NCBI GenBank assembly: GCA_965644295.1
Contig: CBFFRP010000362.1
Span: 186,001-250,000 of the forward strand
Reading direction: 5' to 3'
Length of the DNA stretch: 64,000 nucleotides
From: Paraphysomonas bandaiensis
Lineage: Eukaryota; Protista; Chrysophyceae
The notes beneath the pieces are model-generated. The model was not told the DNA's origin. It ran no database searches and was given only the letters and a program-made list of their open reading frames with translations. Both the position numbers and the translations under genes were made by a program. Of the stretch, positions 2,578-60,383 are shown in pieces (positions within the stretch are counted from its first letter, which is position 1; each line of letters starts with the position of its first letter).

Positions 2578-3160
2578 TTTACCTATTAATAAAAAGGATT
2601 GAATTATAGATTCTAGTAGCTAGTAAGGCAGCAATAAAACAAGGATATGACTGTGGTTGTATTCGCTCGGTATCTTATTGAGTTTCAAAATTTTTGGTAA
2701 CATTCTCACCACAATATATAAAAACATGTATAATAGTTTATGTAGCTAGATTAATTTATTCATATACAATCACTATCTGACACCTACCGCCATTCTCCTA
2801 TTAAAATGCGAAAGCATAGTAATTAACTAACAGACTGACACAAGTAATGTATTTATGTCGCGTTGCCCGCTACACTCGAGCTACTTCTATCAGTATACTG
2901 CTAACTGCTAAGTAAATACTATGTATTGTCTTTGCGTCTTTACCTTGTGCTTGTGTACATATCTTTCACGCATCGCTGCTTTATGCCTACGGAATAAAAT
3001 GATGTCCATATTTCATTGCCCCACCTCGGTAGAGCGAACCAACAGTACTGCTTAGTCGACGCTAGTTTAAGTTTATGACTACATTGATTGCTAACTACTT
3101 ACGAACTTCATGCAAGAAATACATGACTGTGATCCCAAAACACAGCAGTAAGTAGAATAT

Positions 3161-3679
3161 CTAAGCATTCTTCTCTGCCCTTTCTCTTCTACTCCTCGCA
3201 ATAGTTTCTGCATCGAAATCCAAACGAGGCTCCTTCCAGAGAATTTCGTAAAGCCTATGTTTCTTTTTCTTCGACTTCTGTTGACACGACACAGCACGAA
3301 TAATATCGCCTACGCGGCAAATTTCTTCCTCGTCATGTATCATTACTTTCTTAGTATATCTCAGATATGCTTTGTACTTGGAGATATATTTGCGCTTCTG
3401 AACGGCTATGGTGCAGCTCTTTGCACACTTGGTGGCAACAACTTTACCGACCATCGACTGTCTTATTCTCTTCTTCTCCTCATAGGCTTTCGTCACATCT
3501 GATATTTCTTTCTTATACTCATCTTCCAATCCAGCACACATCGTCCGAACGATCTGTAATCAATAACCATGAGATAAAGGAGAGTGATGAGATGAGATGC
3601 TTACATTCAGACGGACCGTATTGAGGCCCTGGAACAACTGCATCTTGGACCCCTGAACCCTTGATAATGCAGAAAACAT
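3161..3679 (-). CDS. MRPS17: Ribosomal protein uS17, probably mitochondrial (2 exons: 3679-3605, 3553-3161)
   Basis: S17 core 'MVGKVVATKCAKSCTIAV...KYKAYLRYTKKVMIHDEEEICRVGDIIRAVSCQQKSKKKKHRL'. A 51-bp GT-AG intron joins in frame a transit-peptide-like exon, MFSALSRVQGSKMQLFQGLNTVRLN. Confidence 0.85.
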
Positions 3680-4234
3680 GGCTCTAGATATTGTGCGAGC
3701 GGCGGGGTGTATTTATATGAGAGAGGAGTGTGATGGCGTGGCCTCTTCGTATTAAACACTGATTATCAGTCAGTCATATAGCAGTATGCTTGTGTATGCG
3801 TGTATCGTATATGGGATACAGTGGTATGCTATGGTATGGTGTGGTGTGGTATGGTGTGGTATACTGAACACTACGCTGCTGTGCACTGGGCATCTTCATA
3901 TTCTATGGAGGGGTGTACAATGCACTCCGAGTGGTATACTGCTGTACTCTGTCTATACACACCAGTGGACCATAGTATACGTATACTATACACGGTATAC
4001 AGAAAGATGTACAGGACTGGCGAGAGATGTGTGTGTATATGCGTATACAGAGTATACGGCACAGCTCTCCATATAGGCACACAGCACACATAGTCTGTAG
4101 CTGTAGCAAGAACATCATCATCTTCATCGTCTCCAGAGCCTCCAGAGCCTCCTTGTGAACAGAACTGCATCTGTGTATCTTGTTATTTTCATTCGAAGCA
4201 TTCTACCTGCATACAGCAGATCTATCACACTGAT

Positions 4235-5165: not shown

Positions 5166-7393
5166 CTGACGTTTCCGGACTGCACTCTTCTAGTCATTGC
5201 TGTTTACTAGCAGCTAAACTAGCTTATAGATCAGTTTGGCACGCTGAATTATTTTGAAAATGTTCGCATTTACTGCAAAACAATAAACGAAGTTGACACA
5301 AAAATCATACTTCTCAATTATAACGTGTTGACAGCCTTGAATATTTGCATAGTAGTCTAACTAATTTTCTTGTCTCATTTGTCGTAGTACTACTAATAAT
5401 GTATCGTATTAACGTTTCAATGATAAAAGAAAATTAAAGAGACTGATTGACGAATGGTTTTGTATTCATTCTGGGAGCTGATCCCTCAATATGAAACTAA
5501 GCCTGACCTACATATTACTTATGCTAAACGTAAGTCACTTACACTTTATGTAGTACTGGTACCAAAACGTTCAGTGAGTACAGTCATCATAGCTATAAGA
5601 AGTTGTTTGAAGTCCGTTTGCATAACTTCTATCTTTTCACTTCAATTTGCTAGAGGTATCTGAGTATGTATTATGTATATACACAGTGGTCTGTTGTCTG
5701 TTTGTATATACTATATACGTATATAAAATATACACTGTCACACTTGTTACAAAAATTTACGTTTGTATTGGAATGAGTACAACACTTTATAGTATTCCAT
5801 ATTTCTTTATTACTAATCATATCATTTACATGGATAATCAAAAGCTTACAGCAACGAATATTCTAACACCGTGTGTGAGAATCGAATGTCAAATGCACTC
5901 ATTCGTAGTGAAGAAGTACACACTTTGACTTATGGCTCAGAAACAGTCACCAACGTAGTATAGACAAGTATGTGTGCTGATGATATAGGTAGCAGTATGT
6001 TATGTATATGACGGGATAAAGCTCGGAAACTGCAATAACATGACTCTGATGAAGAATCATTCGAAGACTATGTCAGCCACTCCACAGGTTTAAGAAATAA
6101 TGAAATATACAATGTGTTTACAGCACGAAGTAGGGGGCTAATTCAGCCCCCTAATTTCCAATCTTTTGTGACATGAAAAGTTTACATAGGGTATCAGTTA
6201 CAGACTTTGAGAATATCAGGAGCAGTGCTAGACTGACTTATAATCCTTGCCTGATGAATAATGAACAATCGAATTCCCCGTAGAGCGGGTTGGTTTCAAC
6301 AAAAAGGCAATCATCCTATATCTACATTGTGCCGTTTTGCCACGAATGCAATAAAAAATGAGGCCAACTTGCGACCAATCGTATAAAGCACACCACATCG
6401 TAATTCTATTTTTACTTCTATTATTCAATATCTTGGGATTGAATGAAAGCATTACATTACATTTCAACTTCTATGTTTTGTTCTTTTCTGATGCATACTT
6501 CTGTCAAACTATAATTTTACTTTGTCAATATTATTCAGTAAATAGCAATATACTTTTCTCACGCTATGTTCTGTTTCATCAAGATTGTGTAATAATTCTG
6601 TTAAATTATCTCCATCTCTCTGCTGAAAAATATATTCCGGAGGTAGGAATATTTTACCACTCTTGTAGAATACACCACAACACTCATTAGATATATAAAT
6701 TTTCAAATTGAAATAAAATAGAATATTATTCATACTTATTTCTGTTTTCATAGGCACTAGGGTAAAAATTCATATAACACATAAAAATACATACACTGGT
6801 AGGCCACCATGTCTTTTCCAGAACACGATCTGGCGTTTACACCTGAGTTTGCTGTTTCTATACTTTTCTAGCTGCTCCTACCAGCGTTACACATTGGGAT
6901 GAGTAAAACGTAAATATCTGAATGTTGAACGCACTCAATATTCAAATACTAAACGTATAATCTACACCTCTTATCATTCATTGATATTCGCTGCATAAAA
7001 AATTACAGAACAATATTATCAGATCTTAGATAGACACGATCATATGCTATCAAAGTATTTCAATTTCTCTAGCATAATTAATATCATATCATTATTCATG
7101 TACACAGCCTTTAACTACTGAATTCTTCAAGTAACTGACATAATTCAAATATCTTTTCGAAATACAGCTTGCTCAAAAGCAGCAAAACTCAACAATGGTG
7201 TCTGTATGTAAATACTTGAAGACCAAATGCCATTGTAACACATATGATCCTACACTCGTTATTTTTAGAGACCGCTGATATTTAGAGAATACAAAGTCAT
7301 TTCTACAATAGATACCACAGCGCATGTAATCAGGTAAATACAACAATATATTACAAAATGATATCGAAATGTGCACCAGATCCAGGGCGTGAG

Positions 7394-10300
7394 TTACTTC
7401 GGTAAATGCCATTTCGGACAGCTGTACATGGCTACATTACGCTTTGCCCATTCAGCTGTGTCGCAGGTGGAGGGCATAGCTACCATTAAAAAAGGTATTT
7501 GATGGTCAAACGATTGGTATGTTATATCTGCAGGTATGCTGTTCGCTGTAGGGAAATCTGGTGTCACGTATAGCGGACACTGGAAATCATCAGGGCTAAA
7601 GGGATCGTCCACTGTTGCTGTAATTGTCAAATGAAGTTCCTGTTAACAAAGGTTTGAGGTGCACTAATTACAAATATATTTATAAAATATTAATTCTACT
7701 ACTGTCAATATATATAATACCTGAGTAATCTGAGAAGCTGTGAAAGGGTACATGAAGTCAATGCTATACTTCTGCTGCTCCCATCTGGCATTAGCGAGAT
7801 GGACTGCAGACACAACTACAGAATAAGAAGAGCTCACCGGCGAGTTATTTTGAGAGTACAGTTTTGACAGTGCTATATTACGTTCCGCCGCCGTGCCAGG
7901 CATATCATGAACTCTCGTTTCAAGCTTCACATTATCAATCGGAGTTTGCAGTTTTCTTGCAAGTGTATCTTTGATAACAAACAGCAAAGCAGAGGGGTTT
8001 TGAAGAAGATGAAGTTTAACACAGTCTGGTTGTCTACTAGTATACCACGACGACAACATCGAACGACGCTCACGCAATTGACCAACCCATTCTTCTAGAG
8101 AAACGCAAGGTGGATTCGTATCACTATAGCACCGCAGCCAAGATGGTGGCACTTCACTTCTACTTAACGACTCATAAAAATGTGCCGCAGAAGGCGGACA
8201 AGTGCTTAAACACATCATATCCTCAATATGCCTCTTGAAGTATAACACACAGCTGTTGAAGCATACAACTTCAAGTAATGCAAACTTCCAGAGTTGATCG
8301 TCTACTGTTTTTTTTCTTGCTGTTTTACTACCTTCTACAAGTCTATGGGATCGTTTTCGAGATGATAAAATGCTGCCACTACTGGGAAGGCGGCTCAATG
8401 GAGTCCCAATCTTGTGACGGCTGCTCAAGGTCATAGCTTCGCTCGACTCAATAGCAATAGGGATTGGTAGAAGTTTCAAAATAACTGACAAATAATCCTT
8501 AAAACAACCCACAACGTAAGAATTAACTCCATAGTTGACAGGAGGTAGACCAGACCGTATACTAAATGCATCATTGAAACCTACAACACAATGCAACTGA
8601 GATTGTGAGAGCTCACCAGAGGTACAGCCTAGGAAGTCTACAACGCCGACATCTCGAGTGTGGTCTTCCAGTAGAGATTGTACACTAACAGTGAAGTCAT
8701 CAAGGCTTGCACGATCCATTGAGCTTGGAAGAGGGAGAACTCCGAGAAGGTAGTACTCCTCACTGCTATCTAAGCTACCTGGTGTAAAGTAATTCTCAAA
8801 CTCTGCTTCAATCATACGAATCGCTAGAGTGTTATCAACTAACACAGTGTACAAACTATCCACCAGTTGTCCGAGCAGGACACGAAGCGTTTCCGCATAA
8901 GCATCCGTATGATAAAGTGTCCTGAATTGCATAATAGTTTTCGTTGCATGTCGAAGCGTGTCGTCACCAATCGAGGAAATGTGCTCACACACACGGAGCA
9001 AAACTGCTGTGTGAAACAACGCCAGTATCCAGTAGACTCTCGCTGTTCCTCTTGGAATCCGACGGTTAGACTCCTTAGATATCTTCAAGATATGCTCGTC
9101 ATGAAATGCCATTATCACAATCACAACGTGATTCAGCACTTCAACGTAATTTTTCATCAGCAGAATCGGGGTATAGCAGCGCATGTATACAGTACCAGTA
9201 TCAGTAACCTCATTGTTGTACGAAAGTCGAATTAACTCGATGCTCTCCACTGCACAATTACCATTGAGGTTTAGAAGAGCAGGGAGTAGATCACTTTCCA
9301 AATTATATAGCTTAGGTCTCCCAGGATGAGCAACAACATGAACAGATTGAAAAGGTGTAATATTGATACTGGAACGTTGAGCCGGAGAGCTCATATCTGC
9401 CGCAGAGCCACTGCGTGACCTCATTAGGGGGGTACTTTCAGACAGGGTATCAGTGTGAACGCTGCCATGCTTGGATGATATATCCCATGATACCATCGAA
9501 TTCGAGATTGGCCAAAACTGCACAGACGGTGAGTCCAAAAGGCTACATTTATCAGCCCAACTACCAGCCCTCTCCATTGCTCCACTAATCGATGTATCAA
9601 ATGCTTGTGAATAGTTCTGAAAAATACTTATAGTTTTTGCATGTTCAGTATTTAGAGCCGACAACCGTTGTACCAATTTGCGATGGGTACAACTCTGGGT
9701 GCTGTTCTGACGATCGATTTCCGGGATTTTCCAGTCGCTTAAATTTAAGATAGTGGCATCGATAAAGCTATCTACAGCTAGAGGCTTCAATGCCAATATT
9801 ATCAACAGATTTTCAATCCAGTTTAACTGATCTAGACAGCCTTGAGGCATAGGAAGGACATGCTGAGGCTTCGAGTATGCATTGGCCCATGCTTCTAACT
9901 CTGGTGCAAAATCCACCAAGAGGGAAAGTACATATTCTACAGATTCTGAACAACATATCTCTGTCCATTTCGTGTGAATATAAGTAAGTGCTTCTTCTAA
10001 ACATAATTTTGTCTCTGGAGATATACATGTCTGCATACCTCGTCGCTTACAACGTATTAAACCAAGTGATCCAATATACTTTTGAAATATACTTAACACA
10101 CAAGATATGTGGTCAGTCCGGTTGTTACTGTCGGATAAATTAAGATTTGCTACAATACTCAGCTGAAGATAATACACATCTCTTCCTGGAAGTTGTTTGA
10201 CAAGGTCAATGTAACAGTTGTCTAAAACCTCAATCAAAACTTTACGAAGAGAAGTGGATTGGTAGCTCACAATTATATCAAGTACAAGCTGTACAATTCT

Positions 10301-13300
10301 TTGAGGTATGGCATAGTGCACGACATGAGGGAACCTGAGAGTGCTATTTACAAAAGCAATTAAGCACTTCAAAGTGGGTGATATATCTGCGTGTAAAAAT
10401 TTCCACTGCAGTGCGAGCATACGACAGGCCGACTGATACATATACGCATCCATAGTTTTGGAAAACATTGGTGTATTTCTCATACGTATAATACTTGAAT
10501 ATAGAGTTTTCCAAGCATCGCATATCGATTTATCGAAGCATCCTCCGTGTGCAAGATAGAATAAAATAACAATATCCGGGCATATGAAACTTTTAGAGTC
10601 AAAACAAATAATTGTAGTGCTCGGATTGGCTATATCAAGTATATGCTGTTCGTCTGACTCAATGCGAAGAAGTGATTCTACCAAACAATCGTCAGAGTCA
10701 GGAGCAGCATCATCGCCTCCATGATTCTGACCGCTCGATTGGCAAGCCTCAAGGCCACACATCTCACACAAGACGTGGGAAAAGAAATGACCATTTCCAC
10801 CTACCCGTGCAGTATTTTCTACAAGAATGGCGAGCACAACTGCAGACAGTTCTATCGTCACACTTGGTGCAGCACACTTAATGATAACCAAAGAATCAAT
10901 AAAACTACAAATTTTATCAAAACGCTGCCCCTTTACTTCTGCAACAGTATGATAGTAGCTATAAACAACACCAAGGGGATCAGTATTGCGTGGCTTCAGT
11001 CCACATACCGTGTTCGCCATCGTGGTCAGCACGAACTCTATATATTCTGCTCGACTATTAAGTGGACACAAAGACACATATCGAGCCTTTACTACAGCCA
11101 ACACAATATCACTTAGAGATTGTATTAACTTATGCTGCACAGATCCCGCTATCGGTGTTGCCCCTAGCGCACTACCGTCGTCACCATGCCCCTCTGTAAA
11201 AGGTTCACTTATATCTTCATGACTTGATGCAACGGAGGCATACATAGATGTAAGTCCTAAATAGATCGCATTTTGCTTATCCCACAATACTTTGGTCTGC
11301 TCGGCGCAACAGATATTGAAAATCTTTATGATAAAGTCATAAGTGCCTTGGGTGTACTCTTGACTTTGAATTGTATAACTGTGGCTCGACGTCTCCAATA
11401 AATCACTGTCTCGAGCTGCCAAAACAACTTCAGAAATTGAAGCAGATACCATTTCCGCAGTTTGTGAGCTAAATACGCTGCTGAGAAGATCCATATTGAC
11501 CCCATATAGTGGAGAAAAGTGAACGTTTCGTATTCGTGCAGTCATGGTCGGTTCAAGTGAAAGTTCCACCGTGGTTTTACTGATGTCAGTATATGGACCA
11601 AACGATACAATCATTTTTATTGACGACACATATTTGTTTAAGAGCATCCGCATCTGAGGATCTTTTCTGGGGTATATTCCATACTTTTCTTCTAATATAG
11701 AGTTCGCCAAATCGGTGGTCATATTGAACGTACGGTAAAGGTTTTTCCACATTGTTTTGTCAATAACTCCATTGTTAGATTCTAAATGTAAATGCCATAA
11801 TATTGGGTGCAACTCATTCTCATCACCAGAGTCACAATTTTTTTTAATATTTCTAATGCATGTACTTCTTGCTAGGGCTGCAAATGAGTTTGGTAAAGAA
11901 AAGTCTTTATTCAGCTCAGTCGACTGACTCTTGCGGTAAGACAACAACAAAAGGCAAAACCCATTCACTACCCTATCGTTTAGTTCCCTTAATGACATAT
12001 CGTGGTCTAATAAGTGAGCTTTATAACGAAAGTCGCACACTACACATGACATCTTCAAAACACTTTTGATAAAAGGAAGTACTGAACCAACAGCACATCC
12101 AAAATGTCCAGGAGTCACGAGAAAAACACTGACCTTATGAACGTCTCTCCACAACCCTGCATTACCGGTATCCACTAAGTCAATGTCCAATTTATCGCCA
12201 ATACCACAAGCTTTTCCATCAAGCATGTTGTTTACAAATTTATCCCTGATTTCATCGACACTCATAAGGCCCACGAATACTCTGTTTTCTATTTTCTCCT
12301 CACGTGCAACTGGTCCAACAGCCCCTCGGACAATTTTCGCAGGAGAACCTGATGAATTCTTCAATGCAGACATACGATGTAAAGCGACTGTCGTTGCAAA
12401 ACGAGGAGCTACATTCTGACGCCCGAAGCTTTGTGTCAATGCGTTCTTTAAATTTGATGTTCGGAATGACGCCTCATTAAGAATTTTGTCCAAAGAACTA
12501 TATATCTGCCTCTCGAAAAAAGACCCCGAAATTTCAGAGTTGAGGGCCCGCTTCCACGTTTTCCCTATTTCTCCAGATGAGACAACCGGAAGGTCCTCTA
12601 GATGTACCCTCAACGACTCCAAGAGATTCGATGCTCGCCACGAAGAGGGGCAATGCTTCAAATGAGAGGATAAGGGCAAACCTTCACAGTCGAGATGCCG
12701 AATTTGATCATATAGCTTGACTGACAAGTATGCTATATCAAAAGCAAGCGACTCTTGAATAAAGGGACACATTAGTTGTAACTTCGAGGACATCACGTCA
12801 GTAAGAATAATATCACTACCGGACAAAATCATTGTAAAACAGTTTCCCAATAGCCGACTGTTCTTTGCATTGTCTGTCAATGTTCCACAAAGCACGCAAT
12901 AAAAGTGTTTGTGATACACCCACCCTTTTTCCTTGTCAAAATAAGATTTATTAGAAATCATACTGCGGTATAATTCCGCCCCAGAATCCTTATCATAGGA
13001 CGAAGGTGCGGAGAAATTCACATCATCGACGAAGACGGCACCATACGAAGGGAAATTACTTTCCACGAAATATGTACTTGAAATATCTCTGGAATCTTCT
13101 AAATATTTAATAATATTCGTAGGGCTAGAGTCGTGTACCACAGTAAGCCATCTCTTGAATGGAGACATCGCGGATACCATGTTGAACACAATAGATGACT
13201 TACCGACCCCACTGTCGCCAAGTAATGCAATCATGTCAATACAGTCAGTGTCTTGATTAGACGCTTGGTACTGTAGGATATTTCGTTGAATGTATGTCGC

Positions 13301-16300
13301 AGCAATAGAATATTTCGTTGGCACTACGAACTGACTCGTTTCATAGTCACTGCATGTAGAATATGTCGAAATCGTTGACCGCAGAGATCCTGCTAGAACC
13401 GGCACCGAGAAATTAGTGGAAGGCATTTCTTTCCAGTGCACCCATGAAGCTTTTATTTCGTCATCGTCTAACCGTACAAGGCAGTAGTCAAACGGGTCCA
13501 ATGTTGGCGGCAAGATGTCAGGTAAATCATTGTTATATTTTGTAGCCGATTCCTTCATACTCCCAAACCAATTATCCAGATAGTAAGATGACAATGTCGA
13601 ACACGTCCCAAACGACCATATGCAACAATACAACATGATTCGGCAGAAAGTTATTTTATCCCAGCGTCTTTTATAATCACCTTCCTGCTCATTGGCATTT
13701 GACATCACATACACCATATCCACAGAATCTGGGTGCACAGATAGTCCAATATTCTCATACATACATCTTGCCAGCCGGAACAGACTTCGAATAATAGCGT
13801 GTACGCTGATGTGACATTCATTGTCCTTGCTATGCAAGTGCATAAGTGGCAAAATGAAGGTGTCTACACAATACGATGCGGCCTTCCGAAGCAGTGTATC
13901 ATTCGGGTTTTCAAACCTGCACACAATGTATTTATTTGCATAAGTGGCAAAATAAAGGTGTCTACACAATATTCCACTCAAAATATTTGGACCATGATTT
14001 TCTCACCTTTTGCAAAACATATCGACCTCTAACTGCAACGTTGTTTCCACAGAAAAAATAGGTTCTTGAATGCATACAATTGGCATGGAGAGAGTGAAAG
14101 CGGGATCTACATTCGCGATTTCACAGCTTTCCCAAAGCAGTGACAATTTTCCTCTCGTGCCATGTTCCTTGTGGTGATAATAATTCAAGCGTCGACCATA
14201 TTCCATCAAAACAATCGAATTCGGCACATCTAAGTGAACATACTCCACTGAAGGTTCATTACATAATTCCCGCAAGAGCTTATCAACACCACAGAGCTCA
14301 TTAGTTCGATTGCAAGTACCTATTCGGTCTGGATCTTCACTGCTATGAGAGGAGCTAACCAGAACTTCGCATTCAGATGAGGTGAACCCTATTTCTTCTT
14401 CTTCACTCTCCAATAAAACTGGGTTAATAATATGAGGGTATAATTTATTTGGAACGTCATCCCTTCGGTCCGAGTCAGGCAACGAATATAATGAGTTTTC
14501 GACAACGTCAACAGTTGACACATCATCCTCATCATAGCCCGTAATCATGGCAACAGCTTGGCGAATCAATGTCGACTTGCCCGTACCAACACCTCCAACA
14601 ACAATGCATGCGCTTTGTGATGTCAATACATTAACCAGCATTCGTAGTGGGTCGTATACACGCCCCTTAAAATCTGTTTCGTTCATTCGTACATCGAAAG
14701 TAATGCCAAGAAAAATATTACAAGAATGTTGAATATTGGCTAAATCAAAGGATTCGTGAAAATGGTTCGGAAGGCGTTTGAAAAGGTCTTTCAGTATCAT
14801 ATAGCATTGTTGTGCAGATTCCATCTTGTTGACCTTGATTATATCACCTGCTACCTTGGGAATCGAAAAACGGAAAAGTATTTTAAATATCACACCACTG
14901 CTGATTCCACAATGACTCTTGACATGTTCTAGAAACGCTGTAAGCTGCAATGACGACTTGTAGGCGTTAGAAAACCCATACACAACTAAGTAGGGCTCAA
15001 GGACAGCATCCAAGGGTGGTGAAGACACATGAATTGGACGAAACTTTTTTCTTATCGAAGATGGAAAATATATCATTTCCTTGCTTTGATCAACGTTCAT
15101 ACAAACGCTGAAATGCGGCCGTGAGAATACCATACCATGTACGTCAACCTTCACTGCCACATAATTCGAAGGCTTGTTCATATGAACTTCGGCAATACAC
15201 GACACGAGGACAGACAACAATTGAGGTTCAAGTTTCTCTACGTTTACAAAACAAGTATGCAGTCGTGCCATTTCTGTCGCTGCAACGAACATACGAATGC
15301 GATATTCTGTTGATCCTTCGTAGGCACAATCAACCATGCAAAGGTCTTGGCCGAACTCATGAGTTATGCCTTGAATAATAGATCGCTTACCAGTGCCCCG
15401 AGGGCCGCGTAGAAAAGGAATCGATTGAAAAGAAGAGCCAAAAGTACTGGATATAGCCAAATAACACTTCTCAGTAAGAGGTGTTACCACCATTCTCTGG
15501 TGAAAACCATGATACACCATGCCATACTGCTTTTCCACAAACGAGTGGCGTACAATAACTGTCGATGTATCTCTATTGTAAATCTTTTGCAGAGCACAGT
15601 TCAATACAAAAGTCGGTTCGGTGGCTGCATCTACATCATTCGTTGTCTTTTCAGAAATTAACAACATCAAGTCTCTAAGCTGAAGTAGACAGAGCATCAT
15701 ATTCGCCGCACATATTATTTGGTGCGCACTTTTCGCGGTGGACAGTATAGTGGTCAGAATAGCGATGCGGTCATTGATGTCCAATTGAAGCATCCGTTGC
15801 ATCTTGGGCTTAAAGGACGCATTATCAGAACTCATTGAATCTTTAAGTGACTTCCAGAATTGTATCTGAAGCGTTAATATTCTGGCTTGATCACAACAGA
15901 AAGGGTTACGCGCATCATCCATAATTTTCCGATTCTCAGTTACCAATGATGTGATATCTGACTGAAGTTTGTCCGCTATTGCTGATTCGAGGCTCTTGAA
16001 CCAGTCGCCAAGTGTACCGCGAGTGGAACACGGAGTTCTAAACATCAAGGCCTCAGAACCACTGTGGATGCCATCAACAGTTATCTGAAGCTCACCTCTG
16101 GAGCTCAATATCAGTGATGAAACATTGGGAAACAACACTGGTCTGCACTTCTCAAATATCGTTTCCGTGTCTGCTATTGCGTGTACAGCGAACAAGTCCT
16201 CCCTACTCATCAAGTAAAACTTAGGGTATTTGTCTCTGCATTCCAGTATAAAAGTATCTATTACAACATCTGCTTGCTGAACAGAGTCATTGGCACTCTC

Positions 16301-19300
16301 TATCAATTCATCCAGATTAGGCTTCTCCAGCAACACTGCCATGCTGTCATCGACACGAGCAGCCTTTATTATAGTTCTCCACGCTTCGTCCACAACATTG
16401 AAGTGTCGTAGTGCTTGATGAATATACCGGGTTGAGCGGGAGCTTGTAAACAAGACTCTCAACCGCAGATTGTCTTCTTGCAGCTTTAATATGTCCATCA
16501 TCATTCTCTTCCACGACCTCACTTTGGCCAAAAAGTCTTCAAAGCTCTCTTTCATCGTACAAATATAATTCGACTGGAGCGCACTTGTGGCAGTGACACA
16601 CATATCCTCCAATAACTCGGAGCACTCTCTAATATTCCCGATAATAGTAAAAGATTTTAAAACTGTGTGTGACTGAATAATGACGGGTTGGCTTTGCACT
16701 TTCGCTTCTAATTCGCGGAATTTATGTTTCAAATTACTTTCACACACACTTCTATGGTAAATATCTTCAATAGCAACGCCATGGTTACAAATATCTGAAT
16801 CAACTATATCACCGACAGTCATGGCATCGTTGTGAAATATCTCTTGACGGACTACATCCTCAATACATTTCTTGTGGTCTGAATGTAAAGTAGGAGCTTG
16901 AAGATATTCGATGATTGGCGTAATATTATCAAAGAGTTCTATAGACTTTAATATCCAAGATTCCACCTTGGATGCATCGCGTTTTCCAAGAGATGTCAGC
17001 TTTTTCTTGGCAAGCTTTACAGAAGAATATATACGACTGCAATCAACTTCTAGAAATGGTGTGGGCAAAGAGCTGGCTTTGATCTCCCTGATAACCTTCA
17101 CAGCTTCCCATAGACAGGTATGCGTCATCAGCTGTTGTTGAATGCGATCCACTGGGGCACCATCGAATACAAAAACTTCCATCTCAACCTGGCAGTGGGT
17201 GATATATCGAGTTACTCGATTGATTTCAGAAAACAAATTCTCAAGGTCAGCGACCTCTGCAAGGGCTGCAACAGGGTCGCTTTCAGGATCCAGTAGAATT
17301 CCAGAAGCTAAGCGAAGTTCAAGTTCGTTGATTGGGCGCTGTAGCAGCTTTGATTGCAGTACCAGTTCACGCTTGTAGTTTTTAATATTCGCTTCACGAT
17401 TTTCTTCGAACTGAAGCATCGCATCTATATACTGCTGATATTCCGTTTTCAAAGTGGCAGTCAAGCCAAATACTTCGTCCGAAACTGGAATGCTATGGTC
17501 ATCCATTATCTCTTTCAAACTACTGTGAAACATATTTTTCTCTTCTAATGCAGCACTCCGCTGTGAAGCTCCGTTGTAAACTTCAATCACTTTGACATAA
17601 TCATCAACGCTTTCGACCTTCCTTTTCAACCCCTTTTTGACACTGTGGGCTTCGTTATAAATCTTTTCGCCCAAAGTGACGAATATTTTCGGAATACTGT
17701 GGTGATATAGTGCCTTGCATGATATCACTTGGTCCAGCACCTCTTTAACAGTGGTTCGCACGTCCAGGCGAATGACCCCAAGGTCGACATACGGGGATAG
17801 TTTCTGAAGACGGTCCATCCCATCATCAAGCATGTGTAGTGTATGAGATATTTCGTCAATTTTCATAGAAGCTAGAGACTCAAGGTTCAGTTCATTCTGC
17901 ATTTTGATCATGGATGAGTACATTTCACACAGAAAAGAATATTCGTCAACTTCAACTGCGCAACGATCCATGTCGTCCATAATTATCTGTGTACATTGAT
18001 CAACCATGATATGTAGAGAGTTGCGTGTGTCCAAGAAAACTAGATCTTCTACCGAAGAATCTTTAATCTCATTCTGAATGGGTTTGAGTAATTCTGCCAA
18101 TTCCTCGTTATGGAGGAGAATGTGCTCATGACAGCCCGAACTCAATACTTCATCCATTGTTGTCGACAGACCCTCCATAACAGTTTCTTTATTAGGAACA
18201 ATAAGAAGTTTTAGATCTCCAGGGGTCGGCCCCATATCACTAAAGCACCCGCATACTTCATTGTTTTCGACATCATGTCTGGTATCACTAATCGCCATGG
18301 AGACGTTAATATGACCAGAAATGACTTCTCGGCTACGTAGTCTATTTAACTTGTCCAAGAACACGCTTAGCCCGCTCTCAACCGTTGAATAGAGCATATC
18401 ACGAATCATAAAGTCTACAACCCGCACCACACTCGCTACTCGCCTACAATTAAGTCGTATTGCAGCCCTCTCAGTGTAAGAGAGAGGTGTCTCCATGATA
18501 ATCGGGTGTGTGCCATCTTGGCTCAGTGCAGCACCATCACTAACAGTATCGGTACCTACCGTGATTGAAGCATGTCTCATAAGAGACCTCGTTTCCATTT
18601 CCATTGCAGCAGTTAGATCATGTGACTGCTGGTAGTGGAAATATGACGAGGCTGACAACACCGTAGGCATGGCTGTTAGGAGCTCTGTTGCCCGTTTTTC
18701 GCCTTCTGTGCGCACAAGGCTGACTAAATGATGCATCATCGTTGCTTTTGACATTGATGTTGATGCCAAGAGACCATTACTTTGAGCATTTTGTGTTTCA
18801 TCTCCTTCACTATCGCTACCATCATCTAGCTTCATCGCCGCGCGTCGCTGGGTATCTAACAGGCGTGTAATATCATTCAACAAATGGTTTCCTAGTCTAT
18901 TCGTTTCTCGATCATACAGCACTTTGCATGTATTGACAGCGGACAATAAAATATTCTGCATGATTGGATCTAGTATAAACAGACTAGGTTTAAGGGAATT
19001 GACCTGCACCTGAGTCACCACACTATAGTACAAACGAATAAGCTCACACTTACAATACTGCTCCTTCGACTTGAAAGTGCATACTTTCGAAGCTTGAGAA
19101 ATGACTTCCTGTCAGTATAATTGAGAACAAATATGATTATAAACAGGTTAAATTACCGTATACAGAACTGCTTAATAAATGGAATTTGTATTGCTCGATG
19201 ATACGTGTAGTACTCCCACACAAACTGTTTGAGAGTGATTTGATCAGGTTCTCCCCATCCATATCTAACTATACCATGCCTGCTTAGGGTAATATACCGA

Positions 19301-19920
19301 TTACAGCGCGGGTCATGACGAGAAGATGAAATCATAAGTTTATAGGGATTAGATGGGTCCACTGCATCCAAATAACAATACTCTTGCTCGCCACTAATTA
19401 TTACCCGAATTGCCTCTTCAATGCTGGAATCGCAGGTTAAACTTCCACCAAGCTGACCACCGGTCAATCCATCAATATAATTCTTTGTCATGTCGTCTAT
19501 TTTAGTAGCTTGAATATAAGAACTACCAGCTGTTGATAAATTCGGATGGACGAGGGATTCCATCCCTGGCACCTCCAACGAATGCGACTCTATAATACTT
19601 GATCGCATGTGACTCAAAAGATCAGCAATGGCGGGATCCTTTCGTGAATCTAGAGTAGTAACTCGCTCCGCATCATGTTCTGGCCATATAGATGATCCCA
19701 AAACAGCACCATGAGGCTTTAAGTCATCGTGGTTGCCGGAAACAGTGTTTTCGCCATCACGTTCACAGCGACTAGCTTCAGGTGCTGCAGGTGGTGCCAC
19801 TTGAGACTGCCACGCACCATCAGATGGTCGTTTCATAAGCAGTCTATTGTGAAGCCGGCCTCTGGCTATAGCAGAGCTGGGTCGAGGAAACTCTGGGGGC
19901 TTTGATGACCGGGTATTCAT
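7394..19920 (-). CDS. Highly divergent dynein heavy chain-like protein, ~4,100 aa, ~5 exons; N-terminus resembles single-headed inner-arm (DNAH6-like) chains
   Basis: ORFs 19153-19920, 14003-19033, 7664-13981 and 7394-7630 plus a small exon (~19053-19108) join via GT-AG introns. Dynein landmarks appear in order: 'YCYL...NPYKL...YITLSRHGI...IPFIKQF', linker 'RDKYPKFYLMSREDL', 'YGMVYHG...MVVTPLTEKCY', P-loops GPRGTGK / GGVGTGKS / GDSGVGKS, 'VFVDDVN', and C-terminal 'EVPPSW', 'LARKLQTPIDNV', 'FQCPLYVT', 'WAKRNVAM'. Confidence 0.85.
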
Positions 19921-20797: not shown

Positions 20798-23700
20798 ATG
20801 GATAGGGACCGAGATGGTACTGTAATCCATAGCAGGTAATGAATACATAGTAGCTCCACCCCCTTGTATGAAGTGATGCGTATGATGCAGTGAATACGAC
20901 AAAGAAAATACTCCGCGTGCGGGTGCCTATGCACATACCCCTGTACAGTATGAGTTGTATGAGAACTATAAATCAGATAATGTGGATAATGGATCTGTGG
21001 GTCATGATATTGATGATATAGAGTCCAGCACAGTTCGCTCTTGGCATACGGACCGTGTGCAGCCGTTTTCTGACGAAACAGGAACCTCTGAATCACTTAA
21101 TAACAACTATGGAAGTGAGAAATATAGGGCTAGGGATAGTGCGGGTGATATCCATACCGACCTCAACAGCACACTGAAGTATCCGCTAAAGTCTCGTCAT
21201 TCAGTGGACATGAATTCCGAAGTGCAAGTTCTACGAGGCGCTAGCAGAAAACACTTCACACAATCCTGTACTAGTGATTTCATGAAGTCGAAGATTGGTT
21301 GGGTGGAATTAGTTGGACCCCATAATTCGTGCACGGTCTTTGCACGAGCACACGCAACTGACTTAACTGGTAAATTCGAGTTGTTTACCGATGAGAATAT
21401 GACGTCAACGGTGAACAGTTTTATACTCGGTCATCCGAGAACATCTGTTGCAGTGGTTGACGATACGTTTTGCATAGAAACCTTGACAGGTGCGTGTCTG
21501 TGTAAGTGTCATTCGGTAGACGAAGTGAAGGAATGGACGAAAGTTATATGCTACCCAGTATTTTCGGCCTTACCCGTAACTAAAAGTGAGGAATATAGCA
21601 CTGTAGAGCGTACGGATACCGTCGAGAAACCTCGACGACGATATGTTGACAACCAACCTCCTGGCGCTCAGCACAGGTCAACATTTTATATGGCTAAAAA
21701 TCAAGCAAATTTGCGCATTTTATCACGACAAATAAAAGCCAAAAAGGAAAAAGAGGAGGCAACTAAGCGTAAAGTGGAAATGGAAAGATTACGGAAGAAA
21801 CAAGAGGTGCTGGAGCGAAGGAATCAACGACTGAAGGAAAAGGGTATTGACATCGAGTCGTATAATTATCGATCGAAAACCATGTTGGGAGACTTAAATT
21901 CAATGTCTCGCGTCAGCATGAAGCCGACAGTGCCGATATCACCATCTCAACGGGAACTTGAAAACAGCCGCGCTCGGCGCGAGAAAGAGCGGTTGCGAAA
22001 GAAGGTTTTGGAAAGGGAGATTGCAGAGAGAGAGGAAGCCATTTTGCAGGAGCGGTTAGACGAAAAGAAACGAAGACAACAGGCAGCACTGCTATCACGG
22101 CACCAAAGCAGTCAGTCGTTACTGTCTCACATCAAGAGTGTGGTGCGTGACAACTCGCCGGGTGTAGCATTGCGTCGTACAAGCGCCTGCATGTCCATAC
22201 AACGTGTATGGAGAGGAGTTCTTGCCAGGAAAACTGTTCAGAGCTTGCGTTTGCAAATGTCACTGAAGCTGAATGGGTCTGCTATGAATGGAACTCAACG
22301 TAGGTTACAACTTGATGTTGTTAATGGTACGCGGAAGCACACCAATGATACCTATATACCTGTTTCTACCCATATAGTTTCCAACGAAAGGACTGATATA
22401 GCACCTGTTTCACCTCGTAGAAAAATCGTTGACCAACTGCTCTATTGCAACGTACCGAATCAAAATTTGTCGACTTCCTCAAGGGACTTAGAGCGTGTGA
22501 ATGTGCATGATAAGAACTGTCTTCGTGTAGATGGTGAGCACGGACCAGCTGACACATTTGATCCTATTAGAGAAGTGCTCTATAAGCGTGAAGATGTGAA
22601 GGAAATAGTACCGCGAGAGCAGCCGCAATTGAACAGTCATATGACAAGTGATGCTTCGTTTTTTTCTGACCTAACGGATCTCGACTTTGACACAAAATTG
22701 GACTTAATTTCCAATCCCCCCTGCTTTACTGGTGCAAGCGCTGATGTAGATGATGCAGTATCGCCACATGCTCATGAACCGCATTCTCCGAACCTTGATT
22801 GTATTCGTGAGTTGAGTGCAAATTCTGATTTTGTAAACTCTTTCTCGCGTGACTCAGTGCCACGTACATCTGATGACAAGGAGGATTGCGGAAGTCCCGC
22901 GATACGAATAGATGATTCCGAGCATCGAAGTAATGAGGATATTGAACCCAGTAGTTTCGAACGTGATGATGCAGATGAACAGGGTGTTGCATATGCTAAG
23001 GGTGTGTCCAGCGATATTGCGGTCGATGAGCATGTGGTTGAAGAAGCGTTGAACACTAACGCCCCGGGTTTGAATATAGATAATGATCCCCATTCTGCAG
23101 TACAATCTATGGAAAATAACTCTCACCAATCAGAGGATAGACCTTCCGATGAAAAGAGCCCTGGCAACAGCGTCGACTCCACTTTTGATACAACTCCTCC
23201 AGCAGATATTAAAGCCACTGATACTTCTACCGTTATGGGTAATGAAACGTCAGCTGTCACGAAAACACCTAGACATCGACGGGCAGCTGTTGCCAGCGTC
23301 GAGTCCATTGCATCTAATCACAAAGTATCACACACAGAAGCCCTGGATCGCTTAGGAGCGGGAAAAGCACATATGATTGAAGTTCATGCAGGAGGAAAGT
23401 TGATTGGATTAGTGAGTTCTCGTGAAGAAATGATAGAAATGGTAAATGAGTACAAGCGAAAACGTAAACTAGAGAAACGACTGCGGAGAACACAGACTAA
23501 ATTAAAGACTGTCAATGCTTTCAAGGGACGACAGCACGATGACGGCAGTGACAAGAGCTCATTACAATCGGGGGCGGATTGTGATGCTGATAGTGAACTG
23601 AAAAGCACGACCAATTTGTCCATCAGTGCCATGGCAAAAGAACAAAAACGATCACTGGATGCTCACATGAATGAAGTTAGAGAAAGTGAAAGCGCAGTAT

Positions 23701-23966
23701 TGGAACAAGCAGCGGCTGAATCGACTGTTAAGCAAAAAGGTGCACAGGAAGACGCAGCTGCTCAAAGAACAGCAATTTGTCGAGAAGTTCTAGAAGCAAA
23801 GCGAAACTTGGCAATGGGTGATGCTGTAGCTGCTGAAAGTTCCAGACCACCCGTACATACGCAAGCAAACCATGTCGAGATTACCCCTGTTCCGCCTGTG
23901 AATCCTAGGAATAAAAGCATACTTGGGCTATTGGGGTTTAGTAGTCGTAAATTAACACAAACGTAG
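20798..23966 (+). CDS. ~1,040-aa protein with a PH-like segment, charged coiled coil and one IQ motif (exons 20798-20835, 20891-23966)
   Basis: Long open frame; 'FCIETLTGACLCKCHSVDEVKEWTKVI' resembles a PH-domain C-terminal helix; IQ motif 'SIQRVWRGVLARK'. An upstream exon is spliced in frame. Confidence 0.7.
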
Positions 23967-25366: not shown

Positions 25367-28300
25367 TTAAACCACGCCTCGACTACTGCTGTAAACAACA
25401 CGACTCTGACCTGTGAATCTTGAATCATAGAACCCATTGTAATCAAGGCGAACACAGAGATTTGACAACTGAGGGTGGTGCCTGCATAACTCTTTATATC
25501 AGTTGCCACTTTAGAGACACAAGTCATACCTGTAAGAATCCGTCCACAGCTTCTCCAAAAATTCTCCTAGCTGAGTATCGAATGTATCGGAGAATTTCGC
25601 CAGCATGCGAACGTACGCATCATGACTAACCTCGCGAGCAATAAATTCAGACTGGACTCGTATACGGGCCTGTCTAACAGCTGACGATCTTCCAGCTGCA
25701 TCAGCCTCGCCTTTCATGGGACCACGAAGATCGGGATCAAGGATCTCGTTTGTACTGGCAAAACGCTTCATTTGATCAGCGAAAAGCAAGCATGTGGTTG
25801 TAATCTTAGTCAATATTCTCAGCAGATCCTGTGATGCTAGGAGACACTCCTTCAAGCATGTATCCAAAAAGACATCATGCAGGTTGAGCATTTCATCCAT
25901 ATCCTTTGCTCGGCCCATCGCTTCTTCCATCTCATGACTCCGAGGGGTGAATACCTCAATCGTCATGTAATACACAAAGTTTTGCAGAAAGTGCAGCATA
26001 CGGTGCCGTAGACAATATGACGGTCCCATTTCACCACGTAGACCATACTCCTTCGTGTTTTGGTGGTCTTTCCAACAGTCCAAGACACGTAGCTCCACAT
26101 GCTTACAAAAAAATAAAAGCCGTGACAGTAATTGATACTTCGTAACTGCTCGTCTTGAAAGTATAATAGAGAGCGGCCATCCCACTTTGTACTCGAGTGT
26201 AAGCGCCTCAACTCCCTTCAGCCCTTGAGATCCACCAAGCACTGAATAGTTATCCATTCCACTACCCACCGCAGGTCCACCTTCTCCAGCGGTCTGTATC
26301 AAGTGCAGATGCTGGATCAAGTTGTGCGATGCAAGAATGCAACTAACATCGTCTTTGTTAGGGTCATTTGCAAGGGTGGATGTGTGAATGGCAAGATGCA
26401 ATAAGCTCTGTATACGCGGTAATGCCACATCTTTCGCCTCTCTGCGCAACTCTTCTTCTGCAGTGTCCATAAATTGCACATAGAAATCCCCATGCTCCAG
26501 CAAGAAGAAGCGACGCAAGCTTTGAAAATGAGAGTACAGACTGTACTTCTCATCTAGAAGTTTCAGAAGTGTTGAGCTACTAAATTGATACGCCTCGTCA
26601 ATTGCATCGACAAGGGACGATGATCCATCTATGTCGTAGGTGAGCTCACGCTTACACAACTGGGCAGTGAATTCTGGCCCCGTTGGAATGATCAGTAGAG
26701 CCGTTGGCGAGCCAGCTGGTATTTCTGCACCGTCCTCTGATTCTATTGGCTGAGAAACTACACCTGGGCAACAGTCACGAATAACATTTAAATACTTTCC
26801 AGCAGTTAGTGCTTTCATTGCGTGGTCTTGGAGAATACGTGGTACATGGAGGGCTCTCAAAGTATAACGTCCCTCCCAGTATCTGGCGTTAAAGTCTTCC
26901 TCTAACGCCTCCCGAGACACAGCCTTGTGCTCTTGAATGAAAAACTCAGCATAAGGATCACGCAGTTCGCCTTCATACAACCAGAGGGATATCATCCGCA
27001 CAAAAGGAACAGTGGCAGCTTTCAAGACATGCTCATATAGCTGTTTCGCCCTTTCATCCCCTTGTTCCAACATTGCAGAGTGAAGTCTGTCAAGCATACA
27101 CCCTCCGACTCTATCACCTAGACTGGCAATCATGTGGTCAAGTGTACGAAGTGTGGTTTTCGTTGGCTGTAGAAGAAACACCATTTTCTGTATAGTCAAC
27201 CGCTGCAAGGTTAACAGATGCTCGAATTGTGCGACGGCTAAATCGAATTCTCTCATCATTCTCTTGATAGTTGCGGCAATTGCGTGCGCCACAGACCCAT
27301 ATTCATATCTAGACATAACAGCCCTTTTACTTGCTACTACAAACATGTATTGATTGTATTATACCTTGAGCGCGATCTAATGAATACTCGTATGCGATTC
27401 TACAAAAGTAGTATATTAGATTACGCAGTGAATTGAAATTCGACATATACCGCGCACTCGCAGACGGAAAGAAGCATGGCAACCTGATACGCCAAACCCC
27501 TATCACCTGTTCACCAATTCATTACATGTCGCAATATATTCCACTACCACTTCTACTTACTTGAATCTGTGTCTATTAAAAAGGAAAGTTGGTTCAGTTT
27601 TGTAATTTTCTTCCCGTCCTCATTCACAGCTCCGACACGAATATACATACCCTGCCCAAGAGATTAATCTTAAAAACGAATTACTGATAAAGCGTCGACC
27701 TCAACACCGGACAAGGCAAGAATTAGCTCACGGAGAAGTATACCCTCCTGAACAATGGGCGAGAAAGAGTTCAGCTCTGGGGGAAGGGCTTGCACATCCG
27801 CCCGATGTTCTTCAACTGACCCAGGAAAAGTTCTAGCCTACGTGGATTGGTATTGTATAGTCAATTAGCAATAATGTAATTGAGTACATTACACAGCTTA
27901 CAATAGTTTCGGTTGTGGGGCAGTAACGATCTTTAGCCGACATCATTAAATAACTCCCACTATTCGTCCAAATATAAATGTCATGAAGATTGGTAGATAG
28001 TGAACACACCTTAAATAAGGCCGTTGCTTCATCCATTGGGGGGTAGGCTGACATCCGCACCAGTCAATCTGCCAGACTTCACCTCCAAGACCTGATCGAT
28101 CCTTATGTACAAGTTTGGCTGCCCGTCCATCAACGCCCTCCGAAAGTGTCAAAAGCATGTCACTTCCATTCTGTAGCAATAAGAGATCCCCGGTACGCAC
28201 ATACATTCCTCGCGTTTGTTTCTCCTCTTGTCCTCTAGAAGAACCCTTAAGTATAGTCCAGCGCTCGCCCTGTCCAATAAAATGCCGCCAGAACCCCAGT

Positions 28301-49483: not shown

Positions 49484-50021
49484 TTAATAGATAGCACGGG
49501 TGAAAAGACTCGCTATTGATTATTTTAAAGTGAGTTGCGGAGTTTATTCTGAGTTCCTCTAATCTCAGAGCCTGTACGATACTATGCATGTATATATATG
49601 TACTTGTGTCCAGAACTTTTAATGGATACAGTACACCATAGTATACCATGTATACACAGACTACACTGAAAGACTGGACCACACACACACGCCAACTACA
49701 CTGTATTCCGATGTATACCTCCCACACTGTCTTGTATTCTGCTGTATATCGCAACGATTTTTTATCACTGATTTTGGTCTGCTGTGTATCGATATGGTAC
49801 ATAGTCATACCATACTGCTGTAGACTGCAGCTCAATGTGGACACTATGAGACGTATTCCTTGTATTATGCTGTATTTTGATGTCTATCTCTCGCTGTACA
49901 CTGCCACATGTATGTGTATGTGTATGTATATGAGGTGCCTTAATACATACATATCCACCTCACACCCTCCTATTATCAACCTCAGGTGCCAACAAATAAC
50001 AAGTGGGGGCCTGTTTTGAAC

Positions 50022-59068: not shown

Positions 59069-59436
59069 AATGAGGTGAGGTTTACATCCTAGAGGTCAGG
59101 AGGAGGGGGATAGTATGTCTTTGGCTCATCCAGATGTACGCAGATGTCTCCATGTATGTATATGCTATGGGCATGTTACACACACTCACACACTGTCCAG
59201 TACATGCCAGTCCTCCAGGTACCCGTATCGGCATCCTTTGTATATTTTTGTTCAAATATGCCTTTAGTATTGAGACAATAATTATCTGTATTCTAGTCGT
59301 AGTTGTATTGCAGTAATGAAGAGGATATTTGCTTCAATTTATTCCCGAAAAATAAGATGCTGACTGCCCATACGCCGTTGTATGAATGCAGAAGTATGTC
59401 TAACTACTGCGGTACCCCAGTACGTTTCGCAGTATG

Positions 59437-60208
59437 TCCCTGTACCCCACAACCTTCTCCCTGTACCCCACAACCTTCTCCCTGTACCCCACAACCTTCT
59501 CCCTGTACCCAAGTACTATCTCCCCGTACCCCACAACCTTCTCCCTGTACCCAAGTACTATCTCCCCGTACCCCACAACCTTCTCCCTGTACCCAAGTAC
59601 TATCTCCCCGTACCCCACAACCTTCTCCCTGTACCCAAGTACTATCTCCCCGTACCCCACAACCTTCTCCCTGTACCCAAGTACTTCTCCCTGTACCCCA
59701 CAACCTTCTCCCTGTACCCCACAGCCTTCTCCCTGTACCCAAGTACTATCTCCCCGTACCCCACAACCTTCTCCCTGTACCCAAGTACTTCTCCCTGTAC
59801 CCCACAACCTTCTCCCTGTACCCAAGTACTTCTCCCTGTACCCCACAACCTTCTCCCTGTACCCAAGTACTTCTCCCTGTACCCAAGTACTTCTCCCTGT
59901 ACCCAAGTACTTCTCCCTGTACCCAAGTACTTCTCCCTGTACCCAAGTACTTCTCCCTGTACCCAAGTACTATCTCCCCGTACCCCACAAGCTTCTCCCT
60001 GTACCCAAGTACTTCTCCCTGTACCCCACAACCTTCTCCCTGTACCCAAGTACTTCTCCCTGTACCCCACAACCTTCTCCCTGTACCCAAGTACTTGTCC
60101 CTGTACCCAAGTACTTCTCCCTGTACCCAAGTACTTCTCCCTGTACCCAAGTACTATCTCCCCGTACCCCACAACCTTCTCCCTGTACCCAAGTACTATC
60201 TCCCCGTA
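59437..60208. repeat. Compound minisatellite of 20-21-bp variants (ctccctgtaccccacaacctt / ctccctgtacccaagtactt / ctccctgtacccaagtactat / ctccccgtaccccacaacctt)
   Basis: Directly visible tandem array between two divergent genes. Confidence 0.95.
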
Positions 60209-60383
60209 CTGCTGTACCTCTGCACTGCATGCTGCATGTAGTAGTGCTGTAGTTTATCCATACATCTCTATGCATTCATCACACTGGCATGCAGCTATGC
60301 ATATATCTGTATATCCAGTTACTCACTAACTCATCTAATCACAACCACCCAGCAACAGCAGCACCCCTCCCCGTCCCTCTATC

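What the first reader, a model, noticed from the sequence alone, without database searches (positions are those of the whole stretch)
11070..11270. Dynein heavy chain with the stalk and microtubule-binding domain apparently excised
Seen: after the AAA4 region, the segment matching the start of stalk helix CC1 ('TYDFIIKIF...QNAIYLGLTSM', canonical TP.SYL..I...RL..GL.KL) is followed only ~40 aa later by the segment matching the end of CC2 ('SLSDIVLAVVKARYVSLCPLNSRAEYI', canonical L.GD.LL.AA...Y.GPF...R). The linker is a short low-complexity loop (SSHEDISEPFTEGHGDDGSALG) inside a continuous exon. Known: dyneins carry a roughly 300-aa coiled-coil stalk plus MTBD here. Inference: this protein cannot bind microtubules through a stalk, yet ~12.5 kb of reading frame is retained without stops. 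This suggests a selected, non-motile dynein-ring scaffold or regulator.
Basis: partly seen in the sequence, partly recalled or inferred. Interest (0 to 1): 0.85.

Follow-up and report, generated by a model that had tools for sequence, protein, structure and literature searches.

The report
Conserved stalkless inner-arm pseudo-dynein family
A marine golden-alga-like protist and at least nine relatives keep and express a full-size flagellar dynein gene that has cleanly lost the stalk that grips microtubules and the catalytic residues of its main ATP site, so it cannot be a motor and probably acts as a docked structural or regulatory part of the flagellum.

Summary
Confirmed. The minus-strand gene (about 4,085 aa, 5 exons) is a dynein heavy chain in which a 25-residue disordered loop replaces the stalk and microtubule-binding domain. 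The distance between the stalk anchors is 75 aa against 325-353 in normal dyneins. It is not an assembly error or a pseudogene: a 13.1-kb spliced contig from an independent study spans the junction without an indel. Nine divergent orthologs (about 20-40% identical) share the short junction (37-97 aa). An AlphaFold model gives AAA3-AAA4-helical stub-AAA5 and aligns to human dynein about 260 residues short. New here: AAA1 Walker B is lost in 8/8 members, the buttress is shortened (48-85 versus 91 aa), AAA2/AAA3 P-loops are kept, and the tail profile matches DNAH6-type single-headed inner arms, while normal DNAH6-like paralogs remain in the genome. Best reading: a tail-docked, non-motor inner-arm pseudo-dynein. 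Localisation and function are untested, and a closed ring is not shown (AAA6L unmodelled). Non-motile dyneins are known (DNAHX, Kollmar class-12), but these have distorted rather than deleted stalks and outer-arm tails. The scan's own notes flagged the dead AAA1 on this window; none that I saw reported the stalk loss on other DNA.

The parts
19157..19920 (-). Exon 1, N-terminal tail (start codon inferred)
   Evidence: ORF; tblastn-conserved upstream of the ortholog genes in L043/44/45/50/51, weakly in L047
19054..19108 (-). Exon 2, 55-nt mini-exon (predicted; restores frame)
   Evidence: GT-AG sites and phase arithmetic; not read-verified
14007..19003 (-). Exon 3: tail, linker (DHC_N2), AAA1, AAA2L; acceptor at 19003 or 19009
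   Evidence: Pfam DHC_N2 E 4e-42, AAA_6 E 1e-22
17150..19003 (-). DNAH6/IAD5-type single-headed inner-arm tail
   Evidence: Family tail profile hits only 6 PDB dynein chains: DNAH6 x3, Chlamydomonas 8glv_Fm, and 9e5c_6d and 9y6s_6z, E 1e-22 to 5e-9;
15230..15406 (-). AAA1 Walker A (GPRGTGKR, Thr lost) and Walker B (CFVNVEKL, Asp-Glu lost): catalytically dead
   Evidence: Alignment of 8 members against canonical
14573..14596 (-). AAA2 P-loop, intact (GGVGTGKS)
   Evidence: GK[S/T] kept in all members that cover it
13917..14006 (-). Intron, 90 nt, GT-AG, holds the in-frame TGA
   Evidence: Spliced out in contig X8; ORF break at the same place in L045, L047, L050, L052
7721..13916 (-). Exon 4: AAA2S, AAA3, AAA4, stalk stub, AAA5, AAA6 region, C-terminal domain
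   Evidence: Pfam AAA_lid, AAA_7, Dynein_C; AF2 models and VIA alignments
13196..13219 (-). AAA3 P-loop, intact (GDSGVGKS)
   Evidence: G, G, K, S invariant in 11 rows
12065..12088 (-). AAA4 P-loop position, degenerate (no GK)
   Evidence: AAA4 alpha/beta fold still predicted
11225..11362 (-). AAA4S last helix plus 23-residue CC1 stub
   Evidence: Model helices 681-699 and 704-726
11150..11224 (-). Disordered acidic/Gly loop in place of about 250-280 aa of stalk and MTBD
   Evidence: pLDDT <50 at model 728-753; length variable in orthologs
11081..11149 (-). CC2 stub with the L.GD..A...Y motif
   Evidence: Model helix 752-774; in-register best match z=5.3
10403..10576 (-). Shortened buttress/strut (57 aa versus 91)
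   Evidence: anchors set by eye; register agrees with VIA ranges
9083..9715 (-). AAA6L region, degenerate or disordered
   Evidence: pLDDT 21-29; no profile match
7394..7639 (-). Exon 5, end of C-terminal domain and stop
   Evidence: 81 codons plus stop after an 81-nt intron; matches the ortholog C-termini

Best explanation
A lineage-specific (probably chrysophyte) duplicate of the DNAH6/dynein-g (IAD5, Kollmar DHC9) inner-arm heavy chain has become a pseudo-motor. SHOWN: the stalk and MTBD are deleted to a helix-loop-helix stub; the buttress is shortened; AAA1 has lost Walker B and AAA4 its P-loop; AAA2/AAA3 P-loops, the linker, the C-terminal domain and the IAD5-type tail are kept; the gene is spliced, transcribed and under purifying selection; normal DNAH6-like paralogs coexist. 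INFERRED: the tail docks it, with the usual actin/centrin-type light chains, at a single-headed inner-arm site on the A-tubule of some doublets, some region or one of the two unequal flagella. There it fills the slot without touching the neighbouring B-tubule. The nucleotide-stabilised AAA2/AAA3 head acts as a passive spacer or contact for neighbouring structures (N-DRC, radial spoke 3, I1 or other arms), lowering force locally or stabilising the 96-nm repeat.
For: Junction and distances; stalk absent by Pfam and own HMM; AF2 pLDDT 69.8, pTM 0.67 with stub hairpin; VIA Z about 20, model 195-1067 = human DYNC1H1 2739-3874, model 196-942 = 2740-3708; nine orthologs share the junction, three in single ORFs of 3,795-3,929 aa; spliced 13.1-kb contig; omega about 0.18; Walker B lost 8/8; tail specific to the DNAH6 class; mean column identity tail 39% and linker-AAA1 50% versus 30-34% downstream; canonical DNAH6-like chains L024/L027 present. 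Kollmar 2016 (PMC5100056) argues that tails set axonemal position.
Against: No localisation, proteomics or phenotype. The CC1-start anchor is not significant by sequence. AAA6L is not modelled, so the ring may be open or partly disordered. The linker-AAA1 tree leaves the family on a long branch with no supported sister. Models rest on 8-11 sequences. Expression evidence is contigs, not reads, so level, strand and cell state are unknown.
Confidence: 0.6

Rival explanations
1. A non-motor dynein working outside the assembled axoneme, as a cytoplasmic pre-assembly or IFT chaperone, or as a decoy that binds inner-arm light chains or partner heavy chains. This is the role proposed for DNAHX/dynein-X.
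For: DNAHX precedent (PMC11785096); the tail and linker, which bind partners, are the best-conserved parts.
Against: The tail is of the single-headed (monomeric) class, not the dimerising outer-arm type of DNAHX. Keeping about 2,700 aa of motor domain is more than a decoy needs.
Confidence: 0.2
2. It still links doublets, but through a partner acting in trans, such as one of the genome's stand-alone MTBD proteins, or through a new surface on the ring.
For: The genome encodes a stand-alone MTBD in an IQ-repeat gene (G000:C335); scan notes list a further such module.
Against: No link beyond co-occurrence. The stub loop is variable in length and sequence (37-97 aa anchor distance), so it is not a conserved binding site. 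AAA1 is dead, so no power stroke would follow anyway.
Confidence: 0.07
3. The head has been repurposed as an AAA3-driven enzyme or remodeller, in the way of stalkless dynein-like rings such as midasin/Rea1 or RNF213 (own knowledge).
For: The AAA3 Walker A and the acidic Walker B-position residues are the most invariant columns.
Against: The same AAA3 pattern is ordinary for axonemal dyneins; no added effector domain was found; the axonemal tail is retained.
Confidence: 0.08
4. Artefact or decaying relic: assembly collapse, mis-set anchors with the stalk only unrecognisably diverged, or a pseudogene.
For: The CC1-start motif is weak; the family is very divergent.
Against: An independent spliced contig spans the site; nine orthologs share it; there is no room for 300 aa between modelled AAA4 and AAA5; a comparably divergent paralog (C143) keeps a stalk-length segment detected at E 3e-10; omega about 0.18.
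Confidence: 0.03

Closest known systems
DNAH6 / Chlamydomonas dynein g (IAD5; Kollmar class DHC9-alpha)
   Same: Tail and linker homology: best PDB hits for tail profile and for linker-AAA1; same domain order and C-terminal domain; similar length (about 4,100 aa).
   Different: No stalk or MTBD, short buttress, dead AAA1, no AAA4 P-loop, degenerate AAA6L; motor region only about 10-15% identical to solved dyneins in structure alignments.
DNAHX / dynein-X (Chai et al. 2025, PMC11785096)
   Same: Conserved non-motile dynein heavy chain with degenerate AAA1 motifs and a disabled stalk.
   Different: DNAHX is animal-specific, outer-arm-derived, longer (5,272 aa), keeps stalk and MTBD but distorts them by insertions, keeps Walker B, and is heterodimeric. 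This family deletes the stalk, loses Walker B and has a single-headed tail.
Kollmar class-12 dyneins (PMC5100056)
   Same: Stalk region without a typical microtubule-binding site or coiled coil.
   Different: Holozoan, with a class-3 outer-arm-type tail; described as an unusual stalk domain that is present, not a deletion.
Oomycete class-14/15/16 and orphan dyneins; human DNHD1 (class 11)
   Same: Lineage-restricted divergent DHCs with a tail from an ancient axonemal class; strut not identifiable in classes 15 and 16.
   Different: No stalk loss is reported for them. No named oomycete or animal protein was hit by the AAA3-AAA5 query. Direct comparison with class-15/16 sequences was not possible.

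Membership tests
Dynein heavy chain superfamily | Tail-linker (DHC_N2) followed by tandem AAA modules and C-terminal domain, in order | tested here: met
Dynein heavy chain (motor-competent) | Coiled-coil stalk with MTBD between AAA4 and AAA5 | tested here: not met
Dynein heavy chain (motor-competent) | AAA1 Walker A GKT and Walker B DE | tested here: not met
   Walker B lost in 8/8; Walker A Lys lost in 3, Thr lost in 7
Dynein heavy chain (motor-competent) | Full-length buttress from AAA5S | tested here: not met
   48-85 aa versus invariant 91 (anchors by eye, supported)
Dynein heavy chain (motor-competent) | Closed six-module ring including AAA6L | tested here: inconclusive
   AAA6L region pLDDT <30, no profile match; AAA5S, AAA6S and C-terminal domain align, Z about 13, rmsd about 10
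DNAH6/IAD5 (DHC9) class | Class-specific N-terminal tail | tested here: met
DNAH6/IAD5 (DHC9) class | Motor domain groups with DHC9 in phylogeny | tested here: inconclusive
   family monophyletic (SH-aLRT 100) on a long branch, sister unresolved; quick tree only
DNAH6/IAD5 (DHC9) class | Axonemal localisation with actin/centrin light chains | not testable with these tools
   needs proteomics or cryo-ET
DNAHX / class-12 | Outer-arm-type tail | tested here: not met
   No outer-arm chain among the PDB tail hits; one outer-arm-like chain hits only weakly, E 1.5e-5
DNAHX / class-12 | Stalk and MTBD present with insertions; length above 5,000 aa | tested here: not met
   about 4,085 aa, stalk deleted
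Oomycete class-15/16 | Grouping with those sequences | not tested

The most novel reading that the evidence does not exclude
A previously undescribed dynein class: the first natural, evolutionarily conserved heavy chain with the whole stalk and MTBD excised. It is built into the inner-arm row of heterokont flagella as a 'blank' that silences force at chosen positions or in one of the two unequal flagella, giving a natural test of what a dynein head does for the axoneme apart from producing force.
Probability: 0.4. Interest if true: 0.8.

Novelty: new variant of a known kind. Interest (0 to 1): 0.66.

Why it matters
The stalk is treated as a universal part of dynein heavy chains, and stalk-truncated motors in the structure archive are engineered constructs. 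A family that has kept about 4,000 residues under selection across deeply diverged species, after losing stalk, part of the buttress and AAA1 catalysis together, shows that a dynein head has a selectable non-motor role. It also shows the stalk-buttress-AAA1 coupling being dismantled as a unit. It is an independent origin of a pseudo-dynein (inner-arm, protist) beside animal DNAHX, and it gives a concrete candidate for how heterokont flagella might be made unequal. My literature searches (open-access full text only) found no report of it.

Tried and rejected
Hidden intron at the junction: candidate GT-AG pairs exist, but contig X8 shows no skip there, and an intron could only shorten the region further. 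Stalk elsewhere in the gene: none. Divergence hiding the stalk: rejected with the C143 control and the structure ranges. Global hhalign of AAA4-AAA5 failed to give an alignment; local hhalign placed only the CC2 end, weakly (E 0.14). The ESM Atlas feature search was uninformative. The JGI locus scan found no relatives. The four differences in X8 (2 synonymous, 2 not) are too few to use. The linker-AAA1 tree cannot place the family (long branch; quick tree).

Full report
Setting. The window is G000:C362:186001-250000 of a 62.6-Mb eukaryote assembly. A neighbouring gamma-tubulin-complex gene has, among named relatives, Mallomonas annulata (51%), Chrysophyte H2 (47%) and an entry labelled Ectocarpus fasciculatus (54%), against 36% for Phytophthora. 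The sequence occurs in marine samples. I infer a marine ochrophyte, most likely a chrysophyte; this is not firmly identified.

Gene. The dynein gene lies on the minus strand: exons 19920-19157, 19108-19054 (predicted), 19003-14007, 13916-7721 and 7639-7394, summing to about 12.26 kb or 4,085 codons. Pfam finds DHC_N2, AAA_6, AAA_lid, AAA_7 and Dynein_C in order, and no AAA_8, MT, AAA_9 or Dynein_heavy at E<=1. The genome has 18 canonical heavy chains with MT and AAA_9 hits; this contig has DHC_N2 and Dynein_C hits but neither of those.

Observation. From the Tyr of the TP..Y-equivalent to the Leu of L.GD is 75 aa, against 325-353 in 22 canonical chains. Sliding the family profile along a canonical profile puts the CC2-end window exactly in register as the best of about 2,900 positions (z=5.3), but does not recover the CC1-start window. 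That anchor therefore needs other support. AlphaFold2 on AAA3-AAA5 with 11 sequences (pLDDT 69.8, pTM 0.67) gives a full AAA4 alpha/beta domain, the AAA4S helices, a 23-residue helix, a disordered loop (pLDDT <50), a 23-residue helix and then AAA5. The top 50 Foldseek hits are dyneins (E 1e-14 to 1e-11). VIA-align (Z about 20, rmsd 5-8) maps model 196-942 onto human dynein-1 2740-3708 and 195-1067 onto 2739-3874, i.e. 222 and 263 residues short despite a 48-residue disordered stretch in the model. A stalk HMM from the genome's own dyneins finds nothing in this gene or its orthologs (control E 5e-67). A second, similarly divergent heavy chain (C143) still shows a stalk-length segment (E 3e-10), so divergence alone does not explain the absence.

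Not an artefact. Run X8, from another study, holds one 13,097-nt contig that covers 8600-14400, skips exactly the 90-nt GT-AG intron and has no indel at the junction. A marine metatranscriptome contig covers 10921-11257 and a poly(A) library covers the 3' part. These are contigs, so they show presence and splicing, not level.

Conservation. phmmer against 1.8 billion representatives and two further searches gave orthologs P0002, P0003/P0010, P0004, P0005, P0013, P0008, P0015, P0016 and P0017/L052, about 20-26% identical to the window protein in this region, 38% for L052. All show helix, variable loop, then L.D......RY; the anchor distance is 37-97 aa in the eight aligned, and L052 aligns almost without gaps. 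P0010, P0015 and P0016 are single ORFs of 3,929, 3,850 and 3,795 aa; no member has an MT hit. Four loci break their ORF at the same intron position. The family is monophyletic (SH-aLRT 100; quick tree, long branch). Between alleles of one ortholog there are 24 synonymous and 16 non-synonymous changes (omega about 0.18); against L052 synonymous sites are saturated while frames stay open. No member carries an organism name, so the range is inferred as chrysophyte-like.

Co-loss of motor parts. AAA1 Walker B (canonical FDEFNR) is lost in 8/8 members; three also lack the Walker A lysine, and the window has GKR. The AAA4 P-loop is gone. AAA2 and AAA3 P-loops are kept. The buttress, which normally pushes on the stalk (own knowledge), measures 48-85 aa (57 here) against an invariant 91 (anchors by eye, in line with VIA ranges). 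AAA5S, AAA6S and the C-terminal domain align to dynein structures (Z about 13, rmsd about 10), but AAA6L is unmodelled and gives no profile match. A closed ring is therefore not shown.

Origin. The tail profile hits only DNAH6 (three mammalian structures), Chlamydomonas chain 8glv_Fm (probably dynein g; not checked) and two chains (9e5c_6d, 9y6s_6z) from doublet structures, one of them Leishmania. DNAH6 is also the best hit for linker-AAA1. Tail and linker are the best-conserved regions of the family (versus 49, 82). Canonical DNAH6-like chains (L024, L027) remain in the genome, so this is an extra paralog.

Mechanism. Shown: no stalk, no MTBD, no AAA1 catalytic residues, inner-arm-type tail, expression, selection. 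It follows from established dynein mechanics that it cannot bind the neighbouring doublet through a stalk or make a power stroke. Inferred (0.6): it docks by its tail in a single-headed inner-arm position and serves as a forceless spacer or regulatory contact. Rivals: assembly or transport factor (0.2), AAA3-driven enzyme (0.08), partner-supplied microtubule binding (0.07), artefact or relic (0.03).

Known systems. Kollmar 2016 (PMC5100056) describes holozoan class-12 dyneins whose stalk lacks a typical MTBD and coiled coil, with outer-arm tails, and oomycete classes 15/16 without an identifiable strut. Chai et al. 2025 (PMC11785096) show non-motile DNAHX with insertions in stalk and MTBD and a degenerate AAA1. 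This family works like those (non-motor dynein) but fails their membership tests: inner-arm tail, deletion rather than insertion, Walker B lost. Seven full-text searches found no natural stalk-deleted dynein; the library is open-access only.

Verdict. Real, conserved and apparently undescribed: a new variant of the known kind 'non-motile dynein heavy chain'. Interest 0.66.

Noticed in passing
L041:5642-7423 (-), G000:C335 about 68163-68657: Stand-alone dynein MTBD (PF12777 E 1e-17; own stalk HMM E 1e-23; Atlas 0.94) in a non-dynein gene; the next ORF carries a weak hydrolase-like region and IQ repeats.
   Followed up: partly
L039/L040, G000:C143 about 76000-92500 (-): Second highly divergent dynein heavy chain (DHC_N2, AAA_7, weak AAA_8) with many insertions; keeps a stalk-length segment that Pfam MT misses; only weak matches to the stalkless family profile.
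   Followed up: partly
G000:C141/C367 and C234/C442: Two pairs of near-identical outer-arm-type heavy chains on different contigs: recent duplicates or uncollapsed haplotypes.
   Followed up: no
window 20886-23963 (+): 1,000-aa ORF with an IQ motif and a weak PH-like hit, head-to-head with the dynein gene about 1 kb away; possible shared promoter region.
   Followed up: no
window 49944-55034 (+): Myosin gene: motor domain, IQ motifs, coiled-coil tail.
   Followed up: no
window 59300-60330: Tandem repeat with open frames on both strands and strong GC skew.
   Followed up: no
window 25514-27358 (-): Gamma-tubulin complex component 2, used for lineage placement.
   Followed up: partly
window about 6700-7390: By record arithmetic the X8 contig runs about 700 nt beyond the stop at 7394; long 3' UTR or merge with a neighbouring transcript.
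   Followed up: no
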